Notes: generated by a model not told the origin, from the letters alone. Shown: positions 1,940 through 21,743, numbered from the whole stretch's first letter. The stretch is DNA of 63,705 nucleotides, filler included, from Octopus bimaculoides (GCF_001194135.2; 6 parts of 5 records of this genome joined end to end with filler, not necessarily neighbours in it); one strand, 5' to 3'. Numbers and translations: made by a program.

Positions 1940-2664
1940 TTGTGTATGAAAGATTATTAATATAGATAAACCCATCATCAAAGTATCTGATATCTTACAA
2001 GAGATAAGTAGACAGACAAGTAGTTAAATAGATAGATATACTGGAGACAAGTAGTTTAACACAGTAATGAGTGATTCCCTGCTTTACTTACAGTTAGAGA
2101 TGTGATCACAGTATGGTGTAAGTAAGAGGACGCAAACAGCTGTCTCACCTGCTTGTCTGATATGTTATTGACCTGATCAACCACTGTCCACTGCAAACTC
2201 TTTTCAGGAACCAATTCCAAAGATGTTTTTTGATGCAAGAGTTTACTCCCAGACTGGAGTGTCTGATCTTCTTCAGTCCATCAGAAAAAAAGTGAAGCCT
2301 CATTGGTTGATCAGTGACCAACTCACTTTACATGACAAGCTGGTCTGACTGCAGACAAATGTTCTTTCAAAAACTAAAGAAACAAGGTTAGGAGGTGGCA
2401 TCTACAAACTGAACCAAGTTATTCCAATATGAGTTACACACAAATATTTTAATCTTTAATTGGTAAATCATCAATCAAATTAATTAATTAAAGTGAGAAT
2501 GAGGCAGAAAATGGTCAAGTTCTTGTTCCAAACCTCATCTGAGCATTTTTATCCATTGAGGGCCGTGATGTTCTTTAATTACCTTCATTTCTGTTGACAA
2601 AAAAAAATAACAGAGAAATGTTTTAAATACTGAATAATGTAAAATGAATGAAATACAAAGGTTA

Positions 2665-2718: not shown

Positions 2719-2728
2719 TTACCTGCTC
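2719..2728 (-). CDS. PAN/coiled-coil gene, terminal exon coding part (R-S-R-stop)
   Basis: Acceptor tcttatttccccag|G AGC AGG TAA. Phase 2 matches the previous exon. Confidence 0.5.
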
Positions 2729-3634
2729 CTGGGGAAATAAGATCAGTCAAAGAATTTAGTATATTTTATTAATCCCAGGTAAATTTGATGATAGCAGTGA
2801 GATTTAGTTGCTAAACAACTAATTACATGGCCATTGGTTCAAACCGTTCTACCATTGTGTTGTACCTTTGGGCAAAGTATAATCTGGTTTGCACCTAGGT
2901 GGCACAACCACTTCTTAACATCAGAAGTAGGACGAACAGGCTGGCATGGAAATGTGAAACATCAGTAAAACAAATCTTGTATATGTTTGTGTGAAACGTC
3001 AAAAATCTAATGTAGATGATTTTTGTGATTACATCTATTTAATTTCTTTAATGTCCTACTTTAGTCTTTCGTTTTTGTCACTTTTGAAAAACCATTGCTT
3101 CATCATCATCATCATCATCGTTTAATGTCCTTCTTCCATACTGGCTAGCCAGGCAGGAGCCTGCATCAGACTTCTCTGTCTGTTTTGACACGGTTTTTAT
3201 GGCTGATGCCCTTTATAACACCAGCCACTGAGTGGCACCAGCACAGACGAGGTCAGTTTCAGCATGGTTTTTACAGCTGGATGCCCTTCCAGATGCTAAC
3301 CACTTTACTATGTGGTACCAGCACTGGCAGAGTCACCAAGTAACTTGCAAGACAAGAAATCTTTGAGAGGAGAAGAGGCATTGGAGGATGCAATCTTGTG
3401 CCAGATGATGAACGGTTAGAGTATGACAGACAAAATGTCTTGCTGTAGAAGAGGTACATGGCTACCCGGCCAGAGTTTGACATAATATTCCTTAAGACAA
3501 ACTTCACTCTCTCAGTTTATCAGCCATCTTCTCACAGTAGTCAGCTGACTCATTGACTGTCTACTATTAGAATAAAGCTAGTAAACAGAGTAAGAGAGAG
3601 AAACATTTGTATGTAACAGTCATTGTTCACTTAC

Positions 3635-3670
3635 CGTGGTGGAGGAGCTTGCCAAGAGGTATGTTTAATC
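3635..3670 (-). CDS. PAN/coiled-coil gene, 36-nt exon (IKHTSWQAPPP)
   Basis: Acceptor tttatttccatacag| and donor |gtaagt, phase 2-2. Confidence 0.65.
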
Positions 3671-4847
3671 CTGTATGGAAATAAATTGAAAGCAGTGAAA
3701 TTGTTTGGAATGAAATAAAACAAGAATCAGATTGGTGTTAAGTTTTGTGTTGGATAGCCCCCACCATCATCTTTGCTGTGATACAGTTGTAGCTCATCAA
3801 TGTAATCATTCAGTATTTCTAGTCATTTCTCGTGATGTGAGATACATGTTTGGCTAGTGAGCATACAATACTATCCTGTTTAATACCAACCCTACTAATT
3901 AGACAGCTTTTACTCACCAGTGCAACTCTTACAAACACTCTTACCTCCCAAACTGCAAGCAGTGATTTTAATTCCTTGCTAAAAGAATTTCTACTAATTC
4001 TGTGGAATCCACTTTCCCTTTATTTTTCAATCACATGGCTTTCTAAGCCATATATCTTAATACAAATCATTCACATTTGTAGCCCACTTTGCATCTAACT
4101 CTACACAATTGGTAAATTTTCAAAACTATCTCTCTCTCCATTACACCAAGCTAATCATTTTCCTATATACACACCAAATGTGGAAGAACATTGGGTCACT
4201 TCAAAACAATCAAACCAGATCTTCACACTGTCTTGTCCATTGTCTTCAAACAATGCAACCCAAAGTTAACAGATTTTCTACAGCTGGATGCCCTTACTGT
4301 TACCAATCCTCACCTGTTTCCAAGCAAGGTAATATCTCTTCATAGTTGGACATGATTATACACAACTGGAAATGACGGTGACACTTGCTTACAACTATTG
4401 AATGATGTTAAGACAAAGAGATACAACAAACAAGCACACACTCATGTATGTATATATACACAAACGGCAGGCTTCTTTCAGTTTACACCTACCAAACCTC
4501 ACAAGGCTTTGGTCAGCTCAAGGTGATAGCTAAAGACATTTGCCCAAAGTGTTGTATATGTCTTCTACTTAGATCTAAGAATAGGGAGAGAACTTCTGAC
4601 ATTTGTTTAATATAAATCTTAGGGACAAAGAAGTATTTAGACAAATTAGATGTATTTCTTTTTTTTACCTCTAAATGACTGTTAAAATGTGGGATTACTC
4701 TAGCTTCTAACACAAAATGTAATTTTTGGTTGTGAACTAAGGTAAACCAGCTTGAAATTCTATTACCTGTTTTGACTGGCTATATTAACTACAATCAACC
4801 ACACTGAAAAATTATTGTCGGGATTGGATAACCAATAAAATGCTTAC

Positions 4848-4909
4848 TCCACTTTCTTGTGTTGATATTTTCCCTTCTTTGCTTGTGGTTTGTGGATAAC
4901 TCTGGTTTT
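4848..4909 (-). CDS. PAN/coiled-coil gene, 62-nt exon (KTRVIHKPQAKKGKYQHKKV)
   Basis: Acceptor cttttatcatctttcacag| and donor |gtaagc. Phase 0-2 bridges the neighbouring exons. Confidence 0.65.
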
Positions 4910-5505
4910 CTGTGAAAGATGATAAAAGTAGAATGAGTAAACTGTCCACTGGACAGCAATATCAATTACAGCAGTAACACACCAGCATCAGTTGTCAAGC
5001 GATGTTGTGGGGACAGACACACATATATATATATACATATATATACGATGGGCTTGTTTCAGTTTCCGTCTACCAAATCCACTCACAAGGCGATAGTAGA
5101 AGACACTTGACCAAGCTGCCATGCAGTGGGACTGAACCCAGAAGCATGTGGTTGGTAAGCAAGCTACTTACCACACAGCCACTCCTGCACCTAAAATTTT
5201 AGTAAGACCCTTTAATGCAGGCCCTGGGTGAGACTGAACCCTGCTCAGGATGGTCAATGTAGTTGTCTGCTTATGTCTCTACCCACAAGGCCACCAAGAC
5301 ACCCATATATATATATATATATTTCGAAACGCCGGTGTTAAAACAGGGGTAGCTGATGAAGGAAAATGTTCTCTATGTGGCTTGTGTGTTTTCTTGTCTA
5401 CGTTTGTTTGCAATGTCCTGTACCCAGATATGCACCTATACATACAGATGGATGTCGGTATGCACATACCTGTACGTATATATGCCTATACTCATTTACT
5501 ATTTG

Positions 5506-5567
<62 letters not shown>

Positions 5568-5569
<2 letters not shown>

Positions 5570-5918
5570 ATTTTGAGCGTGACCGTTGCCAGTGCCGCCT
5601 GACTGGCCTTCGTAGGGTTTTCGAGTGAGATCGTTGCCAGTGCCCCTGGACTGGCTTTAGTGTGGGTGGCACATAAAAGACACCATTTCGAGCGTGGCCG
5701 TTGCCAGTACCACCTGACTGGCCTTCGTGCGGGTGACACGTAAAAGCACCCACTACACTCTCTGAGTGGTTGGCATTAGGAAGGGCATCCAGCTGTAGAA
5801 ACTCTGCCAAATCAGATTGGAGCCTGGTGTTGCCATCCGGTTTCACCAGTCCCCAGTCAAATCGTCCAACCAATGCTAGCATGGAAGGCGGACGTTAAAC
5901 AATGATGATGATGATGAT
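5568..5918 (+). mobile_element. SINE (V-domain-like, RTE-type tail) with three internal tandem units
   Basis: Repeats of TTCGAGCGTGRCCGTTGCCAGT...GACTGGCCTT, then the GGAAGGGCATCCAGCTGTAGAAAC domain and a GATGATGAT tail. Confidence 0.8.
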
Positions 5919-6088
5919 ACACACACACACACACACACACTGACAAACAGAGAGTATCAACAGATGATCGTAAAACAAGGTTGTTTAGAGAAAGGCAAAA
6001 GACAAAGTTGTTTAAAGAAAGGCAAACGTATTCATTTGTAACAATAGTAAAGGGAGTCAGAAGGAAGAGATGTAAATATGTCACTAAC

Positions 6089-6328
6089 CAAATGAAGTCC
6101 CAGTTTCATATTTTTCTGATTATTCTTCATTTCCCCAAAGCTTGTCTCTAATTCGTTGATACGCATAGCCAGTTTATCAACAACATCTCTCTGAAGGTTT
6201 GGAGTCTGTGAGGCACTGAACAATAACTGGTTGTTCTTGTTCTCTTCAATCTGTTTCATGGCACTGTTTAACATTGTCTGCAAAAGTTCTTGTTTGTTTT
6301 CAATTTCTTTGATTTTCGAAATCGGTCC
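6089..6328 (-). CDS. PAN/coiled-coil gene, exon GPISKIKEIENK...KLGLHL (80 codons)
   Basis: Acceptor tttctctctccag| and donor |gttagt, phase 0-0. Heptad-like E/K/Q/L-rich sequence. Confidence 0.85.
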
Positions 6329-6827
6329 CTGGAGAGAGAAAGCAAAAAGAAAATATCTCATGCTTCAATAGTAACACACTGCATTGTAGGGGAACCTATG
6401 AAGCCACCCCATCTACAGGGTTGCGCAATTTGCTAGAAATTGAAAATTTACCCAACAACTACTCACTGCATCTATCCTGTCACCATCTACACACAGTCCT
6501 TATTTGGTTAACATCCACCCTGTTATCATCACACAAATACACCACCTTTGTTGTATTCCTCTCAGGGGACTTGCAGAGAAAAGACAACGAGTTGTACAAT
6601 TTAGTTATTACATTTATTTACTAATTACATACAAAGAACGCACTCACCGAATGTTCATTATTAAGAAACAAGAATCATGTCCTCGCCATATATATCAATA
6701 ACATTTCACTTTCACAATCACACAAAACAACAATGAAACAAGGACCTCAGACGAACTACATTGAAACACAGGACCTCAGACAAACAAACAAATCTAACAG
6801 TTCATATAATAACCTTGATTATCTTAC

Positions 6828-7070
6828 CTGTGATATCTTCAAAGTGCTGATGTCATTCTGCAGATCGCTCACTTTTAATGACATCTCCTCTAACTGTGCT
6901 TTAATGTCATTTTGCATCATGGTAACTGATGATAAAGATTTAATGATTTTCTCCATCTCATTGGCCGTATTCAAGGAGCGAGTATGTTCTTCTTTCAACT
7001 GTGTCTTCAACATGTCGATATCCTGTCTGGTTTCTTTTCGCTCAGCTTCAATCTTCAGGTTTATTCGAGA
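6828..7070 (-). CDS. PAN/coiled-coil gene, exon SRINLKIEAERK...LKISQ (81 codons)
   Basis: Acceptor ttttttgaaatag| and donor CAG|gtaaga, phase 0-0. Confidence 0.85.
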
Positions 7071-8804
7071 CTATTTCAAAAAATTAGAAATTAAAATAAA
7101 ATCAAAACTTTTGTTATAGATATTTATTGGAACTCACAAGTATTCCAAGTAAATTTTTGTCAGAGAATGGCTATGAGATAAAAGTGCTGGACTACTGACC
7201 ATATGATTGTATGCTCAAACTTTACCACCACCAGCTTTTGTAAATGAGATAAATATTGGAAAAACCTTTGAGCAATGCAGGTGAGGAGTTAGACAAAATA
7301 TATAAGGTCATGTCAATAAATGAAAACAAAGAGAAGAGATTTTATATTACCTTACACAGGTTGTCTACTGATCTTATTTAATAATTGAGAAAAACAATCC
7401 CTTTTTCAAACAGAAGAAAGTAAATAATCAGAGAGTGGAGAAATGTGTTCTTTCTAGTAAACCATTCAACAACATACAAGAATGACTTGTTGGTAACAAT
7501 ACATTTCTCCATAGTCTTTAATTATATTTTCTTATATTTGAAGTGGGGAACTTTTTCCAAAATATCATACAATCATTAAATAACCTATGTAATATAATAT
7601 AATATCTATTTTGTTGTTATTGATTGACAACGCCTTACATATACTTTGCCTAACTCCTCACCTGCATAGATCAAAGGTCTTCTTTTCTTTTTGAAACATT
7701 TATCTTATTTATGCATACTGCAACGCTTCAAACAAATTACAACACTTTTAGAGCTATTGTGTTGTACTCTTGAAAAAGGCATCTACAAATCTGGATAACC
7801 AGCTTTAAAAACCAATACATTCATTATTGCAACAACATATGTAAACAAACATCTTTTTGTTTGTTTTTTGGAAGCATCAAATGTGTATCAAGAAAGTAAT
7901 ATTTCAAATGCAGTATAGCCGTGGATACAGCAGAAAGATTGGATATTTTACTCTCATATGACTGAAAAAGTTGTCATCAGAAAGCTGCAAGGCTGTCAGC
8001 AGGCAGTTTAGCTTAATGGTTATACCCAGCTGGTATCTGAGAGGTGTAGGTTTGAATCCTGTGGCTGTCTGCTGACAACTTTTTCTGTCATATAAAGGTA
8101 AAATACCCAATCTTTCTGCTGTTTTCACAACTATACTACATTCAAAATATTACTTTCTTATCTGTATGATACATTCATTATTGTATTGATATAAACTTGT
8201 TACCAGTTCAAATATGCTTGAGTATATTTGAACCTGTAAGAAGGCTACTTACTGTAATTTGTCACAAAGAAAAATTCTTGCAGAAGACAAATAAGTGTAA
8301 ATACACTTAATCAGTTTGAAATGCTTCCTACTCTGATTGATAAATGTATGTCTTTCAGAGTAGTTATCTCCTCTTCAGCATCAAACAATGGAAAGGGAGG
8401 CACTACAAGCTAACAATGGAAGCCCAGGTCTCTCTCATTATATTCCAATCAACATACTGTGACTGGTTGCATTAAATGGTGGTTCATCTGTACTTTATTG
8501 TATTGATGCACATATAGTGAACCCTTGTAGTGGTCCATGTATTAAGTAATGTGAGGTATAGTGGTATTGTGATGGCTTTCAGCTAAAAGTAGATGGAATG
8601 AACATGGGATGGTAGCTAGACAAAAGATATGTTTTGGTATAAGCATATGTAACAAGATGACAATAACCAATCTAAATAAATTAGAAAGGCTAACTTAGTA
8701 ATCAGCCAAAAGTAAATTAGATGGCAAATGATGAAATGATAAATTTGCATACTTATCTAACTGACACCAGACACACATTACAAACTAAAAGTAGATTAGC
8801 TTAC

Positions 8805-9050
8805 CTCTGGATCCTTTAGTTTGTTCAATTCCAGCTTAATATTCTTGATAAGCTGCAGATTATTTACTGTCTGTGATTTCAAGGTCTTCATGCTGCTAAT
8901 GGCCTCTGTTGCATCTTCTGCAATTTGTCTGACATTCATCTGCAGTTCTGAATACTGCTTGTTGTGCACATCACTGTTGCTACGGATATGCGTCAAGTCC
9001 TCTATCAGACTCTCTTGTGTCTTTCGTACTGCCTTTATTTCTGGTTCCAG
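8805..9050 (-). CDS. PAN/coiled-coil gene, exon LEPEIKAVRK...KLKDPE (82 codons)
   Basis: Acceptor ttcttttccatttccag| and donor GAG|gtaagc, phase 0-0. Confidence 0.85.
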
Positions 9051-10596
9051 CTGGAAATGGAAAAGAACAATAACATTAACAACAGCAACAACAGCTGTGC
9101 ATGCATAACCTCACAGAATCTATAAAAATTATCTGAGTCATTTCAAAGTTTACCTTACAATATCTAAAAATCTCCAGTATTGTAAAAGGTGTCAGAAGGA
9201 ATTACTTTCAGCATTATAAGCTCCATTTTTAAGACCAAATTTCACTGGAAAATTGTCTTTAATCTCTCCAGAGTCAATTAAATATATACCAGTAAAATAC
9301 TGGAGTCAACCAAATCAAACCTTTCCCTCAAAATGTGCTGTTTTATATGAATCTTAGAAATCATTATTTCAAATTTCCAGTTTAATTTGTGAAAGGTTTG
9401 AGTATAAATTTCATAAATTTCCCATCACTGTCCCACCAAAATATGTAAGGAGAATAACCATTCTTATATTATTTTGATAAATTATTTATTACCAAATTTC
9501 TAAATGTCTTAGATGAATTCTTAATAAGATTATAATTTATCCATTCTATAAACTTCAGCTTTAAAGTGTATATTTACAATATTTATAACCACATCCCATT
9601 TCATTTCATGCAACTTCTGAACATCATCAGGAATTTTGTTCCTGTACATGTATATGTACTAGGGATAAGTATATGTACTAGTGGATATGGACTAGATGAG
9701 ATGTTAAAATGATTATAATTTACCCAGGCTATAAACTTCAGGTCTAATGTGTATATCAACAATATTCATATCTAGAACACATCTCATTCCATTCATTTTC
9801 TGGATATCATCAGGTCTTTTATTTCTGGATTTGTGCCTGTACATATCCAGCCAATAATGTCCTTATCCACTAAACATGTGTTTAAGGACTTACTACCATT
9901 AGTTTGAATCTGGTCTGGAATCATGTACATATATACAACCATGAAAAAGACAACAGAAATCAGAGATGTCATCATCATTTAATGTCCATGTTCCATATTG
10001 GCATGGGTTGGATGGTTTTCCAGTCTGATTTGAAATGGTTGCTATGGTTGGATGGTCTTCTTAATGCCAACCACTTTACAGCATACACGAGATGTGTTTT
10101 CATGCCAGCAGCACTGATGTTGCAATAAACATCATGAATATACAGTCTAAAAAAAAGTCTCAATAAATCATATCAATAAAGATTATTTGTTGTTAAAAGG
10201 GCAATAGATTGGCAGTATTTAGTCTGGCTCTTTAGGTTTTGAGTTCAAATCCTGCTGAGGTCAACCTTGCCTTTCATTGGGTCAATAAAATAAAATATCA
10301 ATCAAGTAATGACGTCATTTTTATCAACTAACTCCACTCTCACCAAATTTATGGAAGTGTGCTTATGTTACAAACAATTATTATTTGTTGTTGTAAGAAG
10401 AAGGGGATGTGTGGAAGAGGGTACCACTTTCAGATAACTACACATACAAAATTAAAAAAAGGACAAATAAAATTAAGTTAACTGATGTGAACTAAATTAG
10501 GATTGGTCAGAGCACATTCACACACCCCTACTCCTAGCAACAAATATTAATTGTGAAAGCAGCTTAGGATGACATGGAAAAACAATCAAAAGTTCT

Positions 10597-10831
10597 TTAT
10601 TTCTTTATTGCCCACAAGGGGCTAAACATAGAGGGGACAAACAAAGACAGACAAAGGGGTTAAGTCCATTACATTGACCCCAGTGCGCAACTGGTACTTA
10701 ATTTATCGACCCCAAAAGGATGAAAGGCAAAGTCGACCTCGGCGGAATTTGAACTCAGAACGTAACGGCAGACAAAATACTGCTAAGCATTTCGCCCAGC
10801 GTACTAACATTTCTGCCAGCTTGCTGCCTTG
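10597..10831 (-). mobile_element. tRNA-derived SINE (family with GGCAAAGTCGACCTCGGCGGAATTTGAACTCAG), full length with 15-bp TSD
   Basis: ACAATCAAAAGTTCT flanks both sides (10582-10596, 10832-10846). B-box-like GAGTTCAAATTCC. More than 20 related copies lie in the window. Confidence 0.9.
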
Positions 10832-13800
10832 ACAATCAAAAGTTCTATTGATTACTGGCTTTCTATTCTCTTTCAATTTATGTGTGCGTGTGTGTGTGTG
10901 CGTACATGTATGCATGCATGTGTGTGTCCATCTGTCTGTCCTCTGATACATTTGCATTACTCTTAGGTTGACTATATGAAACTATTAATCATTTTGGTTT
11001 TGCTCATTCCATACTCTTTCAAGTTCCAGATATACTAGGAGAGTGTAGACAGAATTTTTATGTTTCTAAATCAGGAGCAAGTGTGTGTTTAATGTGCTTG
11101 CTCATGTTTTTGTGAGCCAAATATAGATTTTCTCATTTCCATCTACCACCACCAACATCCTATCTCGATACACCAATGCACTCAGGTAATGTGTTTGCCT
11201 TTTTCTTTACATGTATGACTATTTCTGTTGTTTCTAACCATCAAGAGTTAATGTTAACAGAGAAACTATAACATTGACGAACAAAAGTCAATGTAAGAGT
11301 CTGTAGGTGGTTTCTGCATCTGCTAGAAATCACACTCTACTGTCTTAAAAAGAAAGGACACATTTGATTATATAGTCTTAGATAGTTTATGTCTAAATAA
11401 AAGCTACAATGGTGATGAATGGAAAATTTTTGATAACAAGGCTAATGGATCAGGATTAATCTGGGGTTAAACAATAACCAAGATGTCTTACTTGTGTCAT
11501 CTTGCTCTCTGCACTCCACAGTATATTGCTGCAGCTGTCTTCCCCTCCATTGAACCATAAAGGTTTCCTCTGCCAAGTCCACTGAATCCAGTCTTCACAT
11601 GTATAGGTAGGCAAACCCTAATATTAACCATTATCTGGGACCCTGACACGTGCTGCTTCTCCAAGTCAGAGTAGACCTAGGAGCAATAGTGGCTAAGAGA
11701 TGGTTCTACACTCTGTGAAAACCCTGAGGTCTCCTGAACCAGAGCCCCACCACTGGATGCAGTTTAAAGTCATACAAATATAACGGTGTATACATACACA
11801 CATCTGCATATTCATATATAGCTATTTGGGCAAGGTAAAATGCAGTAGGAATAATATGGAGGTTGTAGGAAGTTGTGTGAGGGTTAGTAGTGGTGTGCTA
11901 TTATATGTGTGGGTTAAAGACATTTCTTACAAGGGAGGAGTTTCTGTCTGCAGAATGAGATTAACTCAGTTTTGAAATTAATGTTTTATTTGCTGAAGAG
12001 AACTGCTTTCCTTTCTGTGATGGAGAGGGAACAGAATTTAGAGCCTGAAGTTTAATATCCAAGTAATGGAATGTGAAGTGTTGGAGTGTTTCAAGTTTTC
12101 CAAATGTGGTTACCTGGCTTCATGTTAGATTTTTCTGTAAATATTTCTAAATGTGTGTTCAGATGTTGCTTAAAGCAAACTTTGAATTTGTTTGGAGTTA
12201 GGTCAAGGATTTGTCTATTTGAAGAGCATATGGTTACGTTAACAGCATATACTATGTTATGGTGAAGGTATTTGTAGTTGAGTGGATAGTGGAGTTAGAA
12301 TCAAGTGTTGAGGATTTCTTGGAATGAGTTACGTTTCTTTACAATTTATATTGGATAAAACTGGACAAGATTTAGGATTGTTGAAGACTTTCATAAACTG
12401 ATCCAACAATTCAATTCATCTGTAATTGGTCTTTCTTGTGTATTTCTTTTGCTTTAGAGGCAGTTGATGATAATGTGCTACTTATTGGATACAAAAAGTT
12501 CTTATACTATCTGATTATATCAGTAATTAGCACATACTCTGCTTCAGATATTCTAAGCATCTCTATGGCTATTTCTTATAAACTAGTCTGCCTTTTCTGT
12601 TCTCATAGTCCTTAATTGCACATAGCAACTATACTGTTGTCAACTTCATTGGTTGATCTCTTTCTTGTTGTAGATCCATAAAACATAAAAGCAGAAACAC
12701 TGATTCCAAAGGAATTCTTTGTAATTTCACAATTTCACATGCCAACCAATTCACCACTATCTCAGCACAAGACATGAACATTATACATGTCAGAAATCTA
12801 CCTCTTCAAATAATGGAAATGTAAGGATAAAGAGAAATCCTGTTAAACACTCTCACATAAGTTCGGAGTCATGCAAATCCACTGAGGTAAGTGAACTAGT
12901 TGGCCTATTTTAATTATACACTCTAAACACTAAATCACCATTTGTTGAAGGAGGCCTTTACATGAACGAAAGCTTCCTCATTATCAAAAACATGAATCCC
13001 TGAGCCACAAACATATTCATGAGGGCTTCTCTGCTGAAAGGCTCCAATGTGAAAATCTGAATAAATACCAACATAGAAAAAGTGTATAATTAATTTACTC
13101 TAGACTGTAATAACTCCCAATACACACCTTGCAAAAATTTTATTTTGAAAATCTAACAAAATAACCCAACATACATACATCTTTCAATGATATAACCCTC
13201 CATAAGCAACAAACCCAAGAAATATTTTCTTCAAAGCTTGCCTTAATAAAAATGAATACTCATACAATATCCTTATACTAAGTGATTCCAAAGAACACAT
13301 CAAATCCATCCCATCTCAAAACAAGCTTAAAACTAAGAATAGAAAAATGAAAATCACCTAGTATAACTCACCATGCAATTTACAAGTAACCACAACCAAT
13401 ATTAAATGTTTTGGCAAGGTTTTTATGGCTGGATGCCCTTCCTATACATACACATACATATATACACATATGTGTGAATGGATAAATAGAGGTTGTGTGC
13501 ATATGTAGTTGTCTTATCATATGTTATTGGTTTAACTTTGCCTTTCATATTTTAAGAGCAAGGATATACAAGTTCTATTTAAGAAAATAGATATCAGCCA
13601 TGTGCTGTGGATGTCAATGCAATCAACAGTACACCAATAATTTTATACAATAATAAAAACTAATACACACGCACACATACACACACACTCATATGTAATT
13701 AAAAACACGGAAGTCTTTTCTCAGTCTGTAACCATGTAATAATAACATTATGAGCTACCAAGTAGCATTAAATACAGTGTTACCCAGTTTAACACCACTA

Positions 13801-16466
13801 CAAAATCTGATCCTTGGATGCCTTTAACACAGTTCATTCTGTTGCAAGCATTTCAGCCAGATCTCTGGTCTGAGAATAAATTCCTTCTTTCTTGCTTTCC
13901 TCCCACCTGTCTCAGTGGCCCGAAAAAGATCATGGGTTCTGCCCTTCCTCCTTGGACTAAGCAATATAAGAAAAATATAAAAAAGCCATTACATATTTGT
14001 TTTCATTTAGGATTACATATCATTTATTATGATGTTGCATTTGATATTATTTATTATTACGTAGCATTAGACACCATTTGTTGTCATGCAGTATATTAGA
14101 TACTATTTGCTAGTGTCTTAATTAACAAGGAGAGGATTTTTGTGTAGTTGCACAACCTTCTAGAAATAACAGATCGTACACCTACATAGAAGCTTTCTCT
14201 CTCTCTTTCCTATTTTCCCAAGTCACACCCTATTGTCTTGGATAATGTATTCTTAGACCCACTAGGTCTGAAACATAAGTGATAACCATGAATGGAATGC
14301 TTTTAATTATAGGTCTACTTGACCAAAGCCTATATGAAGCTTAAAAAAAGAAAGCATCAACCAGTCCTGTTCACCCTTCAAGCAATTTTCAAAATATTCC
14401 CATAATAGTGGGATACAACAAGCAATTGTAAGCCTGAAGCCTCAGAAATTCCAGAATAATGTCATTTTTTAAATTTGGATGTCTCTATTTGAGGTTAGTC
14501 TGCTACTGTTCTTTTCATCTGTTATAATTCCATCAATATTTACCATTCTATTAGTTTGTTACTGTTCTATTGATCTGTTACTATTCCATCTATATGTTAC
14601 CATTCTATCAGTAATTTTTCAATTAAGGACAATCAGAACAAATAATAGTAATGTTCTCTCCTTCTTAGAAGAATCAATGAAAATTGCTACGAATCTAGAG
14701 AAAACATACCATAAAGTGACACCTTTCAAACACTCATAAACAACACACAACTCAAAGCATCATTGATCTTATAAATGCTGAATTCTTATCTAATTTCAAA
14801 TTTTGGCCCAAGGCTAGCAATTTCAGAGGGGTGATAGTTGATTACATTGACCCCAGTGCTCAACTGGTCCTTGTTTTATCAACCCTGAAAGGATGAAAAG
14901 TCGACCTTAGCAAAAACTGAACTCAGAACATAAAGCCCAACAAAATGCCACCAAGCATTTTGCCCTGCATGCTAACAACTCAGCCATCTCACTACCTTGA
15001 GTTCTTATCTAATTGAAGTATTGGCTGGTCGTTGTAGATATGAAAGAATCCAAAAGCCCAACATATATTTTAATCCTAAACCTCTACTGTCCTGTTTTAC
15101 AAAATGGTAAATATGTCTTGCATTAGAATACTGCACACATATAGATTCACATACACACCCATATTCAAGACCACATCAAAGAAAACCCACTTGACTTACT
15201 GCCCTTCACTTATTAACGCAACTATCTGGATCTCTATGAAATCACCAAATACTATCTACAAATATCTCTTGTATTCACTGTTACTCTCAAACAGTATTAT
15301 TTGTTTCAGCATCCTGTACAATACATGGGTACATCCACCTCTATGTACTCATAATTCATACTCAGTAACTGAAACTAAATACAGGAATCCCTTGCTTTAT
15401 GGAAGTAATGTGTTCCTGAAAATCTGGCTGTAATGCAAATTGCATAATGCGAAATCAATTTTCATACTGATTTTCATATTATCAAGTGAGATTGTGTTCC
15501 TAAGAAAATAACAGAGAACAAGCGATATGATTGCCTTGATACATGAAAATAACAAATTCTAAACATACACAGTACAATATAGACACATAAAACACAAAAA
15601 CATTTTCAAAAGAATACATTAGGGAATTAATAAGAATTGTAATATTGTAAGAGTACATTCTTATCACAAAAGATGTTGACTACTGTGTGAGGTGGGGGTG
15701 GAGTGAAGAAAAAAGCGTTACTAGGAGGATGAGAGACAATATTTACAATGTTATAATTCATTATCACCAACATCAGCTTGAGGGGTGAAGAACTTATCCA
15801 AAGTTGTTTCTTGTTTATGGTGCATCATCTCTTTCTACAGCACAGTATAGGAACTGAGATCATTGTAAATTCCTTTTGTAAGTTTTGTTATGTTCATAAT
15901 TGGAATCATTATCAGCAAAAACCTACACACTTTCCTCTATAAGTGCCAAACATTAAGGAATAATTTTTGCAGTCAATTTAAGTGGTGCATCACAATATCC
16001 TTCTGAATTTGATGTAGACTTTCTGCTTGAGTTTCTGAGTTTCTGTAAGAGCAAAATTACTGACCATATCCCAAAAGGAAGGAAGGAAGGAAGGAAGGGA
16101 GGGAGGGAGGNNNNNNNNNNNNNNNNNNNNNNNNNNNNNNNNNNNNNNNNNNNNNNNNNNNNNNNNNNNNNNNNNNNNNNNNNNNNNNNNNNNNNNNNNN
16201 NNNNNNNNNNNNNNNNNNNNNNNNNNNNNNNNNNNNNNNNNNNNNNNNNNNNNNNNNNNNNNNNNNNNNNNNNNNNNNNNNNNNNNNNNNNNNNNNNNNN
16301 NNNNNNNNNNNNNNNNNNNNNNNNNNNNNNNNNNNNNNNNNNNNNNNNNNNNNNNNNNNNNNNNNNNNNNNNNNNNNNNNNNNNNNNNNNNNNNNNNNNN
16401 NNNNNNNNNNNNNNNNNNNNNNNNNNNNNNNNNNNNNNNNNNNNNNNNNNNNNNNNNNNNNNNNNN

Positions 16467-16700
16467 TGGCAACGATCTTACTTGGCTTGCCGGGTCTTCT
16501 CACGCACAGCCCATTTCCAAAGGTCTCGGTCCGTAGTCATCGCCTCGGTGAGGCCCAATGTACGAAGGTCTTGCCTCACCACCTCAGCCCAGGTCTTCCT
16601 GGGCCTACCTCTTCCACGGGTTCCCTCAACTGTTAGGGTGTGGCACTTTTTCACGCAGCTATCCTCCTCCATTCTCACCACATGTCCATACCAGCGCAAT
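16467..16700 (-). mobile_element. RTE-clade LINE, 3' end of ORF
   Basis: LRWYGHVVRMEEDSCVKKCHTLTVEGTRGRGRPRKTW is the typical RTE C-terminus (LRWxGHVxRM...RxRGRPRxxW). Confidence 0.9.
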
Positions 16701-17171
16701 TGGTTTGAATTAATCAGGTATTATCTTGTATCTTTGACATATCGATGATGTGATTGCTTATCTTTAGAATAATATTGTAGGTAGGTGAGAGAGGCCAGAT
16801 CTGGCCAGTTTGAAAATAATACAGGTAAGTTATTTTGGCTGGATATGACTGGTTTAAGTGCTAAAGGGTTAAAGTAAGAAGTTTGTATCCTAAAACCAAG
16901 AACAGTCCCAAGCAGGTTAGTATCAAAAGAGTTACAAGTGTCAAACCACATGTTTTTAGCTCCTAAACTTCAAAACATCATGCTCCATGAATCAAATAAA
17001 GTAGAAAAAAGACTAACCTTTTGTAGAAATACCAGTGAAATGGATCTCTTGATCAGTTAAATTTGAGTTATAAGTTAGCTCAAGCAGAGCTGGTCAAAGT
17101 TAGCCAAAAAATAACAGCTATTATATCATTGCTACTAAGTTGTACCTAAAAATAAGGAAAATATTTTATAC

Positions 17172-17597
17172 CTTCTGACGTGCATACAAAACTTCTTGTT
17201 TGATAGTTTCCAAGTTATGTTGCAGCGTTTTGTCTCGCATGTTAATCTCAGCCAAGCCCTTGCTCAAATTATCGGATTCTATTTTTACATTTTTCAATTC
17301 TACTGGAATTACAGATGTCTTATCTTGGATGTTTTCAATCTGTGCAGTCAGATCACTTAACATATGTTTGATCTGTGATTGTTTCTTTTCAAAATTGAAC
17401 TGAGTCTTCTTGAAGGCTGCAACATCAGCCATTGTTTTTTCCATGTTCAAAATGAGGCTCTCTACTTTTCGGTTCAGTTTGTTCATCTCCATTTCTTGCT
17501 GCACTTTACTGTTTTGTAGCTCATCGATTATTTGAGATTTTGTCTTTGATGCCTTCTCAGCCTCCAATCGCATCTCACTGACCTTTTGTCGAATTTC
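17172..17597 (-). CDS. PAN/coiled-coil gene, exon EIRQKVSEMRLEAEK...LYARQK (142 codons)
   Basis: Acceptor ttttattctccttgaaag| and donor AAG|gtataa, phase 0-0. Long heptad-like ORF. Confidence 0.88.
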
Positions 17598-18145
17598 CTT
17601 TCAAGGAGAATAAAATGGAAGAAAATTATTAAAAGAGAAAGGAGGAGGAGAATGTAAAAATATTCTTGTATCAGTCATAATCATGAAATGTGAGTGGTTT
17701 AGTAGATAGGGAATAGGACAACCAGCTAGGAGGTCAATGGATCACATATATACACACACATACAATCAGCAACAGTCCCTGTCTCTTAAGAGTAGAACAT
17801 GAGAATTTCATGTTGCTTTGTTTTAACTTTACATCCACCTCTTGTTTCTTAAATCAACAGCATGCAACCATAAGACTCTCTCCAACCCACACTTTATCAT
17901 CTACCTAATCCACTCACAAGGCTATAGTAAAAGACACTTGCCCAAAGTGTTGCACAGTAGGATTGAACCCCAAACCACATGGTCAGGAAGCAAACTTCTT
18001 AGCTGTATAGCCACACATCCATCTCACAGTCAAACCTGCATCTTTGACACTATATCTATATAAAAGATGCTAGACTCCTTTTAATCATAGTTCTGCTGGA
18101 TCAACGAAAGCCTAGGTCAAAACAACAACAAAAAAGTGTCCTTAC

Positions 18146-18279
18146 ATCAAAATCTTCTATGTCTTCTCTCAGCTGATTGACTTTACTCTGCAGAGCTTCA
18201 AGTTTACGCTGGGTGCCCTCACTCATTCCTTTGTACAACTTATTGTAGTCTTTAGTTTCGGTAGTGACATCTATGGCTG
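18146..18279 (-). CDS. PAN/coiled-coil gene, exon AIDVTTETKDYNKLY...DIEDFD (5' boundary 18279, or ATG at 18331 in an alternative model)
   Basis: Donor GAT|gtaagg. Acceptor gttattgtttggcctttattag| in phase 1. In-frame ATG at 18331 gives a hydrophobic N-terminus. Confidence 0.8.
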
Positions 18280-18807
18280 CTAATAAAGGCCAAACAATAA
18301 CATGGATTAAATGCAGTGCAACATAAAACATTATCCCCCAAATATTATTATCATCATTATCAACATTATTTTCATATTCAACATTATTGCCATCATCAAC
18401 ATTGTTTTCATCATCACCTTCAACCACATTGTTATAATAAGCACCATATTCATCATAATCATCATCATTAGAAACAAGTCAACAAGAAAGGCCTTTATGC
18501 GGTCGCTGAATCTGCTAGAAATAGCAACCAACTCTTTTCTTACATCCTACCATCTAAAACAGGAAAAGACACACTAAATAATGTAGTCCTGTATTCCTCT
18601 AAAAAGACAGGGTGGTCACTACAAGAATACCTTTGGTTACAGTCTAAAGTTGACCTGGTGCTAAACATCATCATCATCATCATAAACAGACCCAACAATA
18701 AAACCTACAATTCAATCATCATTCTGTTAGCAAATATTTTTGTTTCTTTTTTTTTTTAATTTACATGTTGAGAAAAAAAATTTATTAAAACAGCAGATAT
18801 TTCTTAC

Positions 18808-18822
18808 TTGCAATGAATTCAA
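18808..18822 (-). CDS. Candidate 15-nt micro-exon (VEFIA in phase 1-1)
   Basis: aatttcttctttccag|TTGAATTCATTGCAA|gtaaga. It keeps frame between the PAN exon and the first coiled-coil exon. Confidence 0.5.
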
Positions 18823-19007
18823 CTGGAAAGAAGAAATTCCTAGAGGCAGACCTTAAAGTTTAACAAAAGTAAGAGGTATACCACAAGTCTGATATTACAA
18901 TACTATTATGAACAATAAAGATTTCTTTTTGTTTTCTGTCACAGTGCATTGAATGAAGAGGACATTATGAAACCAGGTTAAATAAAGTGTTGGGGTTTAC
19001 ATAGAAA

Positions 19008-19330
19008 TCATATAAGGGGAGAAAAAAACTGAATGAGATAAAAAGGATGACACAATCCTCCTGATGTATGAGAATCTCTAACAAGGATCAGCCAAGGAGC
19101 TCCACAAATCAATATCACCCTGAGCACCACGAGCAGGTACCCTTTCCTACTCTGAGCAGATTCATTCATTCTTACCATTTTTAATGTCTCCAACCTATTA
19201 GCAAATTTCCTGGAGAAGAAAATCTCCAACTTCACCCACATGCCCCTTTCAAAATGGAACTTGAAAAAATCAATGAGGACTTCACTGAAGGAGAAAGAGC
19301 CTGTCTTCAATTGTTTCAGTCTCATCTACC
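19008..19330 (-). mobile_element. Decayed CR1/L2-type LINE reverse transcriptase fragment
   Basis: LIDFFKFHF...MVRMNESAQSRKGYLLVVLRVILICGAPWL loosely follows LDFSKAFD...QRVRVNxxxS...SGVPQGSVLGP. Confidence 0.5.
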
Positions 19331-19390
19331 TCACAACCTCTTTCGCCATGGTCATCAGACAAAGGAAAACTATCTACCCTTCCAAATTAA

Positions 19391-19599
19391 CCCTTTAACA
19401 TTTGAATTGGCCATATCTAGCCCAAACCTGTTTTATGTTTAAACTAGCCAGATCTGGCCTCTCACACATACTCTACAATGCCAGTCTAAAAATAATCAAT
19501 CATATTGTCAAAATCTTGACCCTACAAGATAATACATAATTCAAAACAATGTGAATAAATGAACATTACATATGACAGTGTAATACAAATGCTAAAGAG
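19391..19599. mobile_element. piggyBac-like MITE (TTAA TSD, CCCTTTARCATT TIR)
   Basis: TTAA|CCCTTTAACATT ... AATGCTAAAGAG|TTAA. Sister copies at 21011-21213 and 16705-16868 (truncated). Confidence 0.8.
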
Positions 19600-20149
19600 T
19601 TAAAGGAGGACAGTGGGGCAATATTCATGATGGATTCAATTGACCGCTAGATTTGTCCAACACACAACAACAACTGTTTGGCATAACTTTTTAACTCATT
19701 AATACCTAGACACTGGAAAAGTTCATGCAGAATGGTTTTCATCATGCTGCACATATCACAGATAGACTGCCAGGGTTAGAATGCCCTTCATTATAGATAT
19801 TTTCTATCAGAGCCAAATTGGATTAAACAGCTACAATATCAACAACAAAAATATTAGTGCGTTTATGTGTTTAGATGTATGTATGTTTATGTATGCATTA
19901 TTTAGAAGTGAGGTCAGCCTGGAGGTATAGTAGAAAATACTTGCCCATGGTTCCATGTTGTGGGACTTAACCTAAAATCACATGGCTGGGAAGCAAACTT
20001 CTTAACCACACAGATGCGCATGCATGTGTTCATTCATGTTCATGCATGCATGTATGTGTGCATGTGTGTGTGCATGCATGAATTCTTTCAAAGTAAGCCA
20101 TCACCCTAGCGTCAATTGAAAATACAGAAAAGTTTTAGGTCATATCTAC

Positions 20150-20350
20150 CTCCTGCACTTTTGTCTCTTGATCTGCCCGAAACTTGCATATTAAGGTGAA
20201 TGGTGGAGGACAGGTAACACTTCCCTGATTGCTTGTCAAAGTTGAAGAATTTGCATTTGATTGTCGTTTCTGAATCACAGGCTTTGGCACAAGTATCCCG
20301 AGTAAACTTGCCTCGCTTCACAATTCCATTACTGGTGTTTCCCATACAAA
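20150..20350 (-). CDS. PAN/apple domain exon (201 nt, phase 1-1)
   Basis: CMGNTSNG...TCAKACDSETTIKCKFFNFDKQSGKCYLSS has the PAN CxxxC...C+xFxF...CxL pattern. Acceptor ctttcttctctgacaactcactgtag|, donor G|gtagat. It could instead read through to TGA at 20112. Confidence 0.8.
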
Positions 20351-21213: not shown

Positions 21214-21392
21214 TTGACTCATCTTAACATCTTGATTTAAGCTCAGTTTATGTCATCATCCACCCTTCCATTTTTCCTGTTAGTCTTACAAGTTACAAGG
21301 TAACCCCTGTGGAGGCACATGGCTTAGTTGTTAGAGTGTTGAACACCAGGATTGCAAGGTTGAGGTTTTGATTCCTAGATTGAGTGACACTG

Positions 21393-21615
21393 CATGACAC
21401 TTTTTCACACAGCTGTCCTCGTTCATTCGCAACACATGACCCATACCAGCGCAGTTGTCTCTCTTGCACACTACATCTGATGCTTCTTAAATCCAACTTT
21501 TCTCTCAGGATGCTTACACTCTGTTGTGCATGCACACTGACATTACACATCCAGCGGATGTCCTCAGCAGTCATGGCCCATGTTTCATTGCCATGTAGCA
21601 TGGCTGTTCACACGG
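21393..21615 (-). mobile_element. RTE-clade LINE fragment
   Basis: MLHGNETWAMT...LREKLDLRSIRCSVQERQLRWYG. Same clade as 16467-16700. Confidence 0.85.
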
Positions 21616-21691
21616 TTATTAATAATAGTAATAATAATATAAGTTAGGATATTATAACACTTATATATACATATGCATATATATATACATA

Positions 21692-21743
<52 letters not shown>

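What the first reader, a model, noticed from the sequence alone, without database searches (positions are those of the whole stretch)
2719..20350. Uncharacterised PAN/apple plus long coiled-coil plus basic-tail protein assembled from 10 phase-consistent exons
Seen: exons of 201 (1-1), 15 (1-1), 134 (1-0), 426, 246, 243, 240 (all 0-0), 62 (0-2), 36 (2-2) and 10 nt join without a stop into about 537 aa. The order is PAN domain, about 430 aa heptad-like region, then KTRVIHKPQAKKGKYQHKKVEIKHTSWQAPPPRSR. Known: PAN domains mediate protein or carbohydrate binding in extracellular proteins, and coiled coils oligomerise such heads. I do not recognise a named family with PAN on a long stalk and no C-terminal fibrinogen or lectin domain. 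Inference: a lineage-specific secreted oligomeric or structural protein.
Basis: partly seen in the sequence, partly recalled or inferred. Interest (0 to 1): 0.7.

Follow-up and report, generated by a model that had tools for sequence, protein, structure and literature searches.

The report
Secreted PAN-headed coiled-coil rod gene
This is a real Octopus bimaculoides gene, already in RefSeq under the wrong name "myosin-9", that encodes a secreted protein with a small PAN binding head, a roughly 400-residue coiled-coil rod and a basic tail; it belongs to an uncharacterised mollusc-wide family whose other members end in C-type lectin domains, and its rod has barely changed between octopus and argonaut.

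Summary
The exon chain is real. Three points are wrong or missing:
- The 15-nt micro-exon is in no gene model and is not conserved.
- The last coding exon is at 2590-2575 (…PPPR|NEGN*), not 2728-2719.
- A signal-peptide exon lies about 8.5 kb beyond the window.

The assembly gap sits inside intron 4 and hides no conserved exon.

The protein is not a myosin. It has a signal peptide, a four-cysteine PAN domain, about 400 residues of near-continuous heptads, and a tail with net charge about +8.

It is not lineage-specific. Lottia, Solemya, Pinctada and scallops have collinear PAN plus coiled-coil proteins. Exon borders are the same, and the 246- and 243-nt exons are the same size. Scallop members and one transcript from an unidentified organism end in C-type lectin domains. 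Octopods have no such domain.

Between Octopus and Argonauta, the 378-codon rod core has dN 0.009 and dS 0.93 (omega about 0.01), while its immediate flanks have dN 0.33.

Most likely function (inferred, not shown): an extracellular oligomeric spacer or cross-linker. Expression, oligomer state and ligands are unknown.

The parts
20150..20350 (-). PAN/apple-domain exon, 201 nt, phase 1-1. It is a cassette exon, skipped in predicted isoform X3.
   Evidence: Pfam PAN_1 E=4e-8, 33.3 bits against cut-off 21.4. Identical to XP_014786820.1 residues 18-84. Splice sites are conserved in Argonauta. Four cysteines are invariant across the family. The best PDB matches by structure and by sequence are the HGF N domain and the plasminogen PAN domain.
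18808..18822 (-). Candidate only; not part of any gene model.
   Evidence: Strong acceptor and donor, and the only such candidate of 31 in the intron. Absent from all Octopus and Argonauta proteins and not conserved in Argonauta.
18146..18279 (-). Exon 3, 134 nt, phase 1-0. It encodes the linker and the start of the rod. It has a tandem CAG|CAG acceptor (18279 or 18276).
   Evidence: The 3' border matches Lottia (131-nt exon) and Solemya.
17172..17597 (-). Exon 4, 426 nt, phase 0-0, 142 codons of coiled coil.
   Evidence: One amino-acid difference from Argonauta, dS 0.87. A 46%-identical exon of exactly 426 nt occurs in an unidentified organism (Logan run ERR3431203).
16111..16466 (.). Assembly gap (N run) inside intron 4.
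   Evidence: The E4|E5 junction is identical in gap-free Argonauta contigs. No conserved block lies nearby.
8805..9050 (-). Exon 5, 246 nt, phase 0-0, coiled coil. It ends in the family-wide KL.DP. landmark.
   Evidence: The exon has the same 246-nt size and the same borders in Lottia and Solemya.
6828..7070 (-). Exon 6, 243 nt, phase 0-0, coiled coil.
   Evidence: The exon has the same 243-nt size and the same borders in Lottia and Solemya.
6089..6328 (-). Exon 7, 240 nt, phase 0-0. It encodes the end of the conserved rod core (to about residue 490) and a divergent last third.
   Evidence: The matching Lottia exon is also 240 nt.
4848..4909 (-). Exon 8, 62 nt, phase 0-2. It encodes the lysine-rich tail KTRVIHKPQAKKGKYQHKKV. 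Skipping it gives predicted isoform X2, which ends …HLD*.
3635..3670 (-). Exon 9, 36 nt, phase 2-2. It encodes EIKHTSWQAPPP.
   Evidence: The DNA is conserved in Argonauta (87% over 45 nt).
2575..2590 (-). The true last coding exon (R|NEGN plus the TAA stop).
   Evidence: The acceptor and first codons are conserved in Argonauta.
2400..2470 (-). Conserved 3'UTR block containing ATTAAA at 2460 and 2453. Probably the polyadenylation region (inferred).
   Evidence: 78% identity to Argonauta at the matching distance from the stop codon. ATTAAA positions.

Best explanation
Shown or strongly supported:
- The window holds exons 2 to 10 of a single-copy Octopus bimaculoides gene (RefSeq XP_014786820.1, misnamed 'myosin-9').
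- The product enters the secretory pathway through an N-terminal leader. It carries one minimal PAN domain with two disulfides, a rod of about 400 residues of heptad repeats with a few stutters, and a 37-residue tail with net charge about +8.
- It is the octopod member of an old molluscan family: signal peptide, PAN, coiled coil, then usually basic repeats and C-type lectin domains. No C-type lectin domain is found in the octopod proteins or loci; that this reflects a loss is inferred from the relatives.

Inferred mechanism:
- The chains assemble in parallel into a rigid oligomeric rod. The rod would be about 55-60 nm long if continuous. A trimer is the best guess, by analogy with lectins that have coiled-coil stalks and because isoleucine is frequent at both a and d heptad positions.
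- This clusters several PAN heads at one end and several basic tails at the other. PAN heads would bind a glycan or protein ligand. The basic tails would bind polyanions such as sulfated glycans.
- The molecule would therefore work as a fixed-length extracellular spacer or cross-linker in a matrix, mucus or cell coat.
- Predicted alternative splicing removes the head (in-frame skip of the PAN exon) or the tail (skip of exon 8). This would produce one-ended molecules that cap or weaken the cross-links.
- Rod exon sizes have been kept exactly for over 500 million years (dating from general knowledge) while the sequence drifted. That suggests rod length and heptad phase matter.
- In octopods every rod residue is additionally frozen. 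That suggests the rod surface itself has become a binding or self-assembly surface.
For: Gene model:
- 100% identity to XP_014786820.1; exon mapping.
- Orthologues with the same exons in O. sinensis, O. vulgaris and Argonauta hians.
- Between Octopus and Argonauta only the exons are conserved.

Secretion:
- Hydrophobic leaders in the Octopus, Argonauta, Lottia, Solemya and scallop sequences, with small residues at -1/-3.
- A disulfide-bonded PAN domain directly follows the leader.

PAN domain:
- Pfam hit above threshold.
- Invariant C-x3-C-x7-C-x11-C pattern.
- AF2 model with core pLDDT 76-84. Its top 27 PDB structural matches are PAN domains of HGF or plasminogen, with probability up to 0.96.
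- Profile search of PDB sequences also finds HGF and plasminogen (E=0.004).

Rod:
- Periodicity 3.52 residues.
- Unbroken heptad registers over residues 153-275, 275-363 and 363-440. Stutters fall close to the E4/E5 and E5/E6 exon borders.
- Predicted helices span residues 105-506 with short breaks.
- a positions: L13, I11, V9, Q7. d positions: L19, I15.

Family:
- An exhaustive HMMER search finds only 12 proteins with E<1e-3. The ten whose source organism is recorded are all molluscan; two come from unidentified sequencing runs, and one further hit (P0019, PAN-only) was not traced.
- Pfam finds PAN plus Lectin_C in the scallop proteins and in P0012.
- Landmarks are collinear along the alignment.
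- Exon borders and phases are identical. The 246- and 243-nt exons are the same size in Lottia and Solemya, and the 240-nt exon also in Lottia.

Selection (Octopus versus Argonauta):
- Rod core, 378 codons: 7 amino-acid changes, dS 0.93, dN 0.0093.
- Rod flanks: dN 0.33. PAN: dN 0.077.
- Neighbouring gene THUMPD1: dN about 0.14.
Against: - No expression, localisation, ligand or oligomer data exist. I found no paper on any family member.
- The full-length AF2 model has low confidence (mean pLDDT 48), and no multimer prediction was available.
- The a/d residue composition is mixed, so the trimer guess is weak.
- The isoforms are computational RefSeq predictions whose RNA support I could not inspect. 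The immediate stop created by skipping exon 8 is not conserved in Argonauta.
- A plain spacer role does not need the b, c and f heptad positions to be frozen, so the omega of 0.01 is only partly explained.
- Similarity between the octopod tail and the scallop basic repeats is not statistically significant.
Confidence: 0.45

Rival explanations
1. Self-assembling extracellular filament or fibrous material. The rods pack side by side in a fixed stagger, in the way intermediate filaments, paramyosin, whelk egg-capsule proteins or bee silk do. They would form a cuticle, egg-coat, sucker-lining or sensory-matrix fibre. The PAN head and basic tail would serve only as end-to-end or anchoring contacts.
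For: - It best explains why all heptad positions of a sharply bounded 378-residue core are frozen (omega 0.01) while the flanks vary freely (dN 0.33).
- It also fits the exact conservation of rod exon sizes and the long unbroken registers with regularly placed stutters.
- Secreted coiled-coil materials are known (general knowledge).
Against: - In scallops the rod evolves at an ordinary rate: 67% identity between two pectinid genera, lower than for their PAN domain.
- Relatives carry lectin domains, which suit soluble or adaptor proteins better than bulk fibres.
- There are no internal sequence repeats.
- Secreted silk-like proteins usually evolve fast (general knowledge).
Confidence: 0.25
2. 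Soluble humoral pattern-recognition molecule, that is an agglutinin or opsonin. Multivalent PAN heads, plus C-type lectin domains in other molluscs, would bind microbial glycans. This would resemble collectins, ficolins or molluscan FREPs.
For: - The architecture of a head on a coiled-coil stalk, with C-type lectin domains in relatives, resembles collectin-type and tetranectin-type lectins.
- The protein is secreted.
- The heads evolve faster than the stalk.
Against: - The gene is single-copy with no lineage expansion, whereas immune lectins usually diversify (general knowledge).
- The PAN domain is under clear purifying selection (dN/dS about 0.07).
- Octopods have no lectin domain in this gene.
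- An ultra-conserved stalk is not expected for an immune effector.
Confidence: 0.12
3. Type II membrane-anchored or ER/Golgi-lumenal spacer. The N-terminal hydrophobic segment is not cleaved, so the PAN domain and rod project from a membrane, as in CLIMP-63, GOLIM4, LOX-1 or SRCL.
For: - The octopus leader has 13-14 consecutive hydrophobic residues, no charged n-region and a weak cleavage motif.
- Many lectins with coiled-coil stalks are type II membrane proteins (general knowledge).
Against: - Leaders in Argonauta (NSYG|K), Lottia (SNG|AP) and Solemya (VWG|A) have typical cleavage sites.
- There is no cytoplasmic N-terminal segment before the hydrophobic stretch.
- In type II lectins the binding domain lies far from the membrane. 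Here PAN would sit right against it.
Confidence: 0.08
4. Two genes rather than one. The PAN exon would belong to a separate small gene that reads through to the TGA at 20112. The coiled-coil gene would start with signal exon joined to exon 3.
For: - A PAN-less product is predicted in Octopus (X3, and UniProt A0A0L8FU99) and in Argonauta.
- The donor GAG|gtagat is not a strong site.
Against: - PAN and rod are on one polypeptide in every distant relative and on one probable transcript contig.
- The PAN exon's acceptor and donor positions and its phase 1-1 are conserved in Argonauta, Lottia and Solemya.
- On its own the PAN exon would have no leader peptide.
Confidence: 0.04
5. A cytoskeletal myosin heavy chain or a paramyosin-like protein, as the database names suggest.
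For: Only the automatic names 'myosin-9', 'myosin-8' and 'paramyosin-like'. They reflect coiled-coil composition.
Against: - No Myosin_head, IQ or Myosin_tail_1 match at E<=1.
- No PDB myosin match by phmmer. With the family profile, myosin rods score no better than designed coiled coils.
- The leader peptide and the disulfide-bonded PAN domain place the protein outside the cytosol.
Confidence: 0.01

Closest known systems
Molluscan PAN, coiled-coil, C-type lectin proteins. All are uncharacterised predictions: Mizuhopecten XP_021339426.1 and OWF37128.1 ('Mucin-19'), Argopecten XP_069117543.1 ('myosin heavy chain, clone 203-like'), Solemya KAL5008502.1, Pinctada KAK3092385.1, Lottia XP_009046490.1.
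   Same: - Leader peptide and the PAN signature C-A-[KS]-[AS]-C-x2-E-x4-C-x-[FY]-F-x7-C.
- Collinear rod with the KL.DP.S landmark.
- Identical intron positions and phases, including 246- and 243-nt exons.
   Different: - The octopod protein stops after a short basic tail. It has no Cys-loop or basic repeat region and no C-type lectin domain, and the locus holds no relic of one.
- The octopod rod is ultra-conserved (98% amino-acid identity between Octopus and Argonauta). Scallop rods are 67% identical between genera.
PAN (N) domain of hepatocyte growth factor and of plasminogen; leech anti-platelet protein.
   Same: - The same small alpha/beta fold with the two core disulfides.
- These are the best PDB matches both by structure and by sequence profile.
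- The HGF N domain is a heparin-binding module (general knowledge; heparin complexes appear among the hits).
   Different: - In those proteins PAN is followed by kringles and a protease domain, or stands alone. None has a coiled coil.
- About 30% identity, and a weak Foldseek E-value (0.15).
Lectins with coiled-coil stalks: tetranectin, langerin, the collectin neck, and SRCL/COLEC12.
   Same: A binding domain made multivalent by an alpha-helical coiled-coil stalk. Family relatives have a C-terminal C-type lectin domain.
   Different: - The stalk here is several times longer, at about 400 residues.
- There is no collagen G-X-Y region and no transmembrane anchor.
- The head is at the N-terminus and is a PAN domain.
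- No sequence homology to these proteins was detected.
PAN-domain proteins of apical extracellular matrix (Drosophila NompA, C. elegans LET-653).
   Same: Secreted proteins that use PAN modules within an extracellular matrix (general knowledge).
   Different: Those proteins combine PAN with ZP domains and have no coiled-coil rod. The resemblance is recalled from memory and was not tested here.
Non-muscle myosin II heavy chain (myosin-9), the name given in RefSeq.
   Same: Only the heptad-repeat composition.
   Different: No motor domain, IQ motif or myosin-tail domain. The protein has a secretory leader and a PAN domain.

Membership tests
PAN/apple domain (Pfam PF00024) | Profile match above the curated threshold | tested here: met
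   PAN_1 33.3 bits for the exon ORF and 30.1 bits for the joined protein, against a cut-off of 21.4; E=4e-8.
PAN/apple domain (Pfam PF00024) | Core cysteine pattern for the two inner disulfides | tested here: met
   C38-x3-C42-x7-C50-x11-C62 is invariant in nine family members. The extra Cys19 is not conserved, being Tyr in O. sinensis. Disulfide pairing itself cannot be tested here.
PAN/apple domain (Pfam PF00024) | Alpha/beta hairpin-loop fold like the HGF N domain | tested here: inconclusive
   The AF2 model has mean pLDDT 66.5, with the core at 76-84. The top 27 Foldseek PDB hits are PAN domains of HGF or plasminogen (probability up to 0.96, TM 0.55), but the best E-value is only 0.15.
Coiled coil | Heptad periodicity of hydrophobic residues over long stretches | tested here: met
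   The spectral peak is at 3.52 residues. Viterbi register assignment is unbroken for 122, 88 and 77 residues; a and d positions are 55% and 58% Leu/Ile/Val. A family profile hits only generic coiled coils in the PDB.
Coiled coil | Oligomeric, parallel assembly | not testable with these tools
   No multimer prediction or experiment was available. The monomer AF2 model has pLDDT 48.
Molluscan PAN, coiled-coil, C-type lectin family | N-terminal leader followed by a family-type PAN domain | tested here: met
   The leader exon lies outside the window.
Molluscan PAN, coiled-coil, C-type lectin family | Collinear rod with shared intron positions, phases and exon sizes | tested here: met
   The PAN exon is phase 1-1. 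The rod exons are 131/134 nt, 426-432 nt (split in two in Lottia), 246, 243 and 240-249 nt, with the same borders in Octopus, Lottia and Solemya.
Molluscan PAN, coiled-coil, C-type lectin family | C-terminal C-type lectin domain | tested here: not met
   The octopod proteins have no Lectin_C hit. tblastn with relatives' C-termini finds nothing significant in the Octopus or Argonauta loci. THUMPD1 begins about 1 kb after the stop codon. This member is therefore a truncated variant.
Myosin-9 / myosin II heavy chain | Motor (Myosin_head) domain, IQ motifs, Myosin_tail_1 | tested here: not met
   None of these appears at E<=1 in Pfam. phmmer finds no PDB match.
Collectin / SRCL-type lectins | Collagen G-X-Y region plus a C-type lectin domain | tested here: not met
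   The protein has only 14 Gly in 551 residues and no G-X-Y run. It has no C-type lectin domain.

The most novel reading that the evidence does not exclude
With no C-type lectin domain in this gene, the octopod lineage turned the coiled-coil stalk itself into the functional surface. A sharply bounded 378-residue extracellular rod has been frozen at every heptad position (omega about 0.01, comparable to core cytoskeletal proteins), whereas the same rod drifts freely in other molluscs. That would point to a previously unknown, precisely registered extracellular assembly, or a periodic binding partner, specific to octopods. Examples would be a nanometre-scale ruler or filament in a sensory, synaptic or cuticular matrix.
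Probability: 0.25. Interest if true: 0.65.

Novelty: new variant of a known kind. Interest (0 to 1): 0.4.

Why it matters
- It corrects a misleading database name. 'Myosin-9', 'paramyosin-like' and 'Mucin-19' are all the same secreted family.
- It defines an uncharacterised, mollusc-wide architecture: PAN head, long coiled-coil stalk, C-type lectin tail. It shows that octopods have a lectin-less version.
- Two features invite experiments. First, rod exon sizes are identical in gastropod, bivalve and cephalopod although sequence identity is only about 20-25%. That suggests a molecular ruler.
- Second, the rod has an omega of about 0.01 within octopods, which is unusual for an extracellular coiled coil.
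- If the rod proves to be a self-assembling or partner-templated structure, it would be a new extracellular structural element in cephalopods.
- If it is an ordinary matrix cross-linker, the finding is mainly a useful re-annotation.

Tried and rejected
- Profile search of the 5.8-billion-protein set with alignment A2. The word prefilter was swamped by coiled coils and returned only the octopod proteins plus a spurious archaeal hit.
- The same tool with P0010, the E4-like exon from an unidentified organism. It found only itself, so the source organisms of runs ERR3431203 and SRR8281679 remain unknown.
- Full-length AF2. Mean pLDDT was 48, too poor for a fold search.
- PDB sequence searches. The single sequence gave nothing. 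The rod profile hit only generic or designed coiled coils.
- Internal repeat origin of the roughly 80-residue exons. No pair scores above shuffled controls.
- Homology of the octopod tail to the scallop basic repeats (a K-T-Y-S-W motif noticed by eye). It is not significant, z<2.
- A relic C-type lectin exon in the Octopus or Argonauta loci. None found.
- Dual coding, an antisense ORF, or nucleotide-level constraint such as RNA-editing structures as the cause of rod conservation. Rejected because synonymous sites are saturated (dS 0.93) and introns cannot be aligned.
- THUMPD1 microsynteny outside cephalopods. Absent in Lottia within 10 kb.
- Rfam. No RNA family matched in the window.
- Literature. 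Six full-text searches by accession, gene name and domain terms found nothing.
- Genomic loci for the two scallop proteins could not be retrieved.

Full report
**1. What is in the window**

The window is AT-rich eukaryotic DNA (28-44% GC). It is 100% identical to Octopus bimaculoides chromosome CM046605.1 in reverse orientation. N runs bound it on both sides, and the internal gap at 16111-16466 is the same gap in that assembly. The finding's gene is on the minus strand.

**2. The observation**

A 517-aa query made of E1 and E3-E8 is 100% identical, over its whole length, to RefSeq XP_014786820.1. That protein is named "myosin-9 isoform X1" and is 551 aa long. tblastn places E9 in the same protein. 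Eight exons are therefore exact.

- **Micro-exon 18822-18808.** It is in none of the nine octopod protein models and has no counterpart in Argonauta. It is the only one of 31 phase-compatible AG..GT candidates in that intron with strong splice sites. I keep it as an untested candidate.
- **Last coding exon.** It is 2590-2575 (CG|A AAT GAA GGT AAT TAA, giving R-N-E-G-N-stop), not 2728-2719. Argonauta has the same acceptor and first codons, and a conserved 3'UTR block at the same distance downstream.
- **Phase-1 start.** The missing exon encodes MVTVFILYFIICISFNK. It lies about 8.5 kb beyond the window, past a 1.5-kb N run.

**3. The assembly gap**

The gap lies inside intron 4, the 8.1-kb intron between E4 and E5. 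E4 ends in phase 0 and E5 starts in phase 0.

- The junction ARQK|LEPE is identical in two gap-free, 99.8%-identical Argonauta hians haplotigs.
- The same border exists in Lottia and Solemya.
- Only exons are conserved between Octopus and Argonauta, and nothing is conserved near the gap.

There is no sign of a lost exon. An octopus-only cassette exon within the unread bases cannot be excluded.

**4. Predicted isoforms**

- RefSeq X3 and UniProt A0A0L8FU99 skip the PAN exon (201 nt, phase 1-1, so the frame is kept).
- X2 skips the 62-nt exon 8, so exon 9 reads GAT TAA and the product ends …HLD* without the tail.
- These are computational models. I could not inspect their RNA support.
- The immediate stop in X2 is not conserved in Argonauta.

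**5. What the protein is**

*Not a myosin.* Pfam finds PAN_1 (33 bits against a cut-off of 21.4) and no myosin domain.

*The PAN domain.*
- It has four family-invariant cysteines, C-x3-C-x7-C-x11-C.
- An AF2 model of the exon has core pLDDT 76-84.
- Its best PDB structural matches are the HGF N domain, the plasminogen PAN domain and, lower in the list, leech anti-platelet protein. Probability reaches 0.96 and TM 0.55, but the best E-value is only 0.15.
- A sequence profile of the family's PAN domains finds the same HGF and plasminogen structures.

*The rod.*
- Residues 100-510 or so show hydrophobic periodicity of 3.52 residues.
- Heptad registers run unbroken over residues 153-275, 275-363 and 363-440. 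Stutters fall close to the E4/E5 and E5/E6 exon borders.
- AF2 predicts helices across residues 105-506 with short breaks, at low confidence.
- The roughly 80-residue exons are not detectable sequence repeats of one another.

*The tail.* KTRVIHKPQAKKGKYQHKKVEIKHTSWQAPPPRNEGN has net charge about +8. Argonauta keeps the basic character and the TSWQAPPPR motif.

**6. Relatives**

An exhaustive HMMER scan of 1.84 billion cluster representatives found only 12 proteins with E<1e-3. Where the source organism is recorded, it is a mollusc:
- Lottia gigantea
- Solemya velum
- Pinctada imbricata
- Argopecten irradians
- Mizuhopecten yessoensis
- Gigantopelta aegis

Two further hits come from unidentified sequencing runs. 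One further hit (P0019, PAN-only) was not traced.

These proteins share a leader, the family-type PAN domain and a collinear rod with landmarks such as KL.DP.S. The scallop proteins and the 785-aa ORF P0012 end in C-type lectin domains. Some also carry long lysine-rich repeats.

Gene structure settles the homology:

| Exon | Octopus | Lottia | Solemya |
|---|---|---|---|
| Leader | phase 1 at 3' end | same | same |
| PAN | phase 1-1 | phase 1-1 | phase 1-1 |
| Exon 3 | 134 nt | 131 nt | phase 1-0, same 3' border (about 90 nt) |
| Exon 4 | 426 nt | split in two | 432 nt |
| Exon 5 | 246 nt | 246 nt | 246 nt |
| Exon 6 | 243 nt | 243 nt | 243 nt |
| Exon 7 | 240 nt | 240 nt | about 249 nt |

Borders are the same in all three species.

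A 46%-identical exon from an unidentified AT-rich genome is also exactly 426 nt.

The octopod and argonaut loci contain no lectin exon. THUMPD1 begins about 1 kb after the stop codon on the opposite strand.

The octopod protein is therefore the lectin-less member of an old molluscan family, not a lineage-specific invention.

**7. Selection**

Nei-Gojobori estimates, Octopus against Argonauta:

| Region | Codons | dS | dN |
|---|---|---|---|
| Rod core (residues 113-490) | 378 (7 aa changes) | 0.93 | 0.0093 |
| Rod flanks (28 + 24 codons) | 52 | 0.83 | 0.33 |
| PAN | 54 | 1.06 | 0.077 |
| THUMPD1 exons (neighbouring gene) | 162 | 1.47 | about 0.14 |

- Omega for the rod core is about 0.01.
- The THUMPD1 figure is rough. 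It comes from partial tblastx blocks, two of them short and doubtful.
- Synonymous sites are saturated and introns cannot be aligned. The constraint therefore acts on the protein, not on the DNA or RNA.
- In scallops the rod is only 67% identical between two genera and is less conserved than the PAN domain. The freezing of the rod is therefore an octopod feature.

**8. Mechanism (inferred)**

- The protein enters the secretory pathway and forms a parallel coiled-coil oligomer.
- A trimer is the best guess. Isoleucine is frequent at both a and d heptad positions, and related stalk-plus-lectin proteins trimerise (general knowledge).
- The rod would be about 55-60 nm long if continuous.
- Clustered PAN heads at one end and clustered basic tails at the other would make it a fixed-length extracellular spacer or cross-linker.
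- Splice forms lacking the head or the tail would act as one-ended caps.
- Exact conservation of exon sizes despite sequence drift supports a length or phase constraint.
- Freezing of every rod residue in octopods suggests an added role for the rod surface, either self-assembly or a long binding partner.
- That last point is why the fibrous-material reading is my strongest rival.

**9. Limits**

There are no expression, localisation, oligomer or ligand data. I found no literature on any family member.

**10. Verdict**

- This is a real gene.
- The gene is already annotated but misnamed.
- The domain reading is right. The 'lineage-specific, no lectin relatives' reading is wrong.
- Interest is moderate. 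It rests on the unusual constraint on the rod and the newly defined family.

Noticed in passing
window 1203-1604 (+): This is the last coding exon of the neighbouring THUMPD1-like gene. It has a weak Pfam THUMP match at its start and corresponds to the called gene with a THUMP domain. The two genes converge, with about 1 kb between their stop codons. The arrangement is conserved in Argonauta but not in Lottia.
   Followed up: partly
window 16481-16720 (-) and 21296-21607 (-): Two intronic or flanking ORF fragments share a Q-L-R-W-Y-G motif (BLASTP E=8e-4). They have no Pfam match and are probably decayed mobile-element pieces. The first abuts the assembly gap, which may explain why the assembly broke there.
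   Followed up: partly
window 5069-5170, 17900-18001, 19903-20004; also 10663-10832 and 14836-15000: Two families of short interspersed repeats, about 100-170 nt long and 64-86% identical, lie in the gene's introns. They look SINE-like. Their ORF-like translations (…HSQGDSRRHL…) recur.
   Followed up: no
window 7890-7985 / 8064-8159: An inverted repeat with 96-nt arms, 85% complementary and 78 nt apart, lies in intron 5. It looks like a MITE or a hairpin.
   Followed up: no
window 5510-5567, 254-308, 21662-21743: (TA)n microsatellites. The last one runs into the N run that ends the piece, so that scaffold gap also sits in simple sequence.
   Followed up: no
window 6733-7119 (+), 8821-9108 (+), 17200-17403 (+): Long ORFs lie antisense to coiled-coil exons 6, 5 and 4. 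Synonymous sites of those exons are saturated between Octopus and Argonauta, so these ORFs are not conserved. They are best read as by-products of Lys/Glu/Leu-rich codon usage.
   Followed up: partly
window 18276-18279 (-): Exon 3 has a tandem CAG|CAG (NAGNAG) acceptor. Using the downstream AG would delete one alanine codon in frame.
   Followed up: no
L004 (Logan ERR3431203) and L005 (Logan SRR8281679): L004 is an unidentified AT-rich genome. It carries a 426-nt exon 46% identical to Octopus exon 4, with the first 47 residues about 80% identical (my reading of the aligned sequences). L005 is a 4.2-kb contig with an uninterrupted ORF encoding PAN, coiled coil and two C-type lectin domains. I could not determine the source organism of either.
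   Followed up: partly
L001 versus L003 (Argonauta hians): The two Argonauta 'paralogues', annotated as isoforms X1 and X3 on different contigs, are 99.8%-identical haplotigs of one locus. Both carry the PAN exon.
   Followed up: yes
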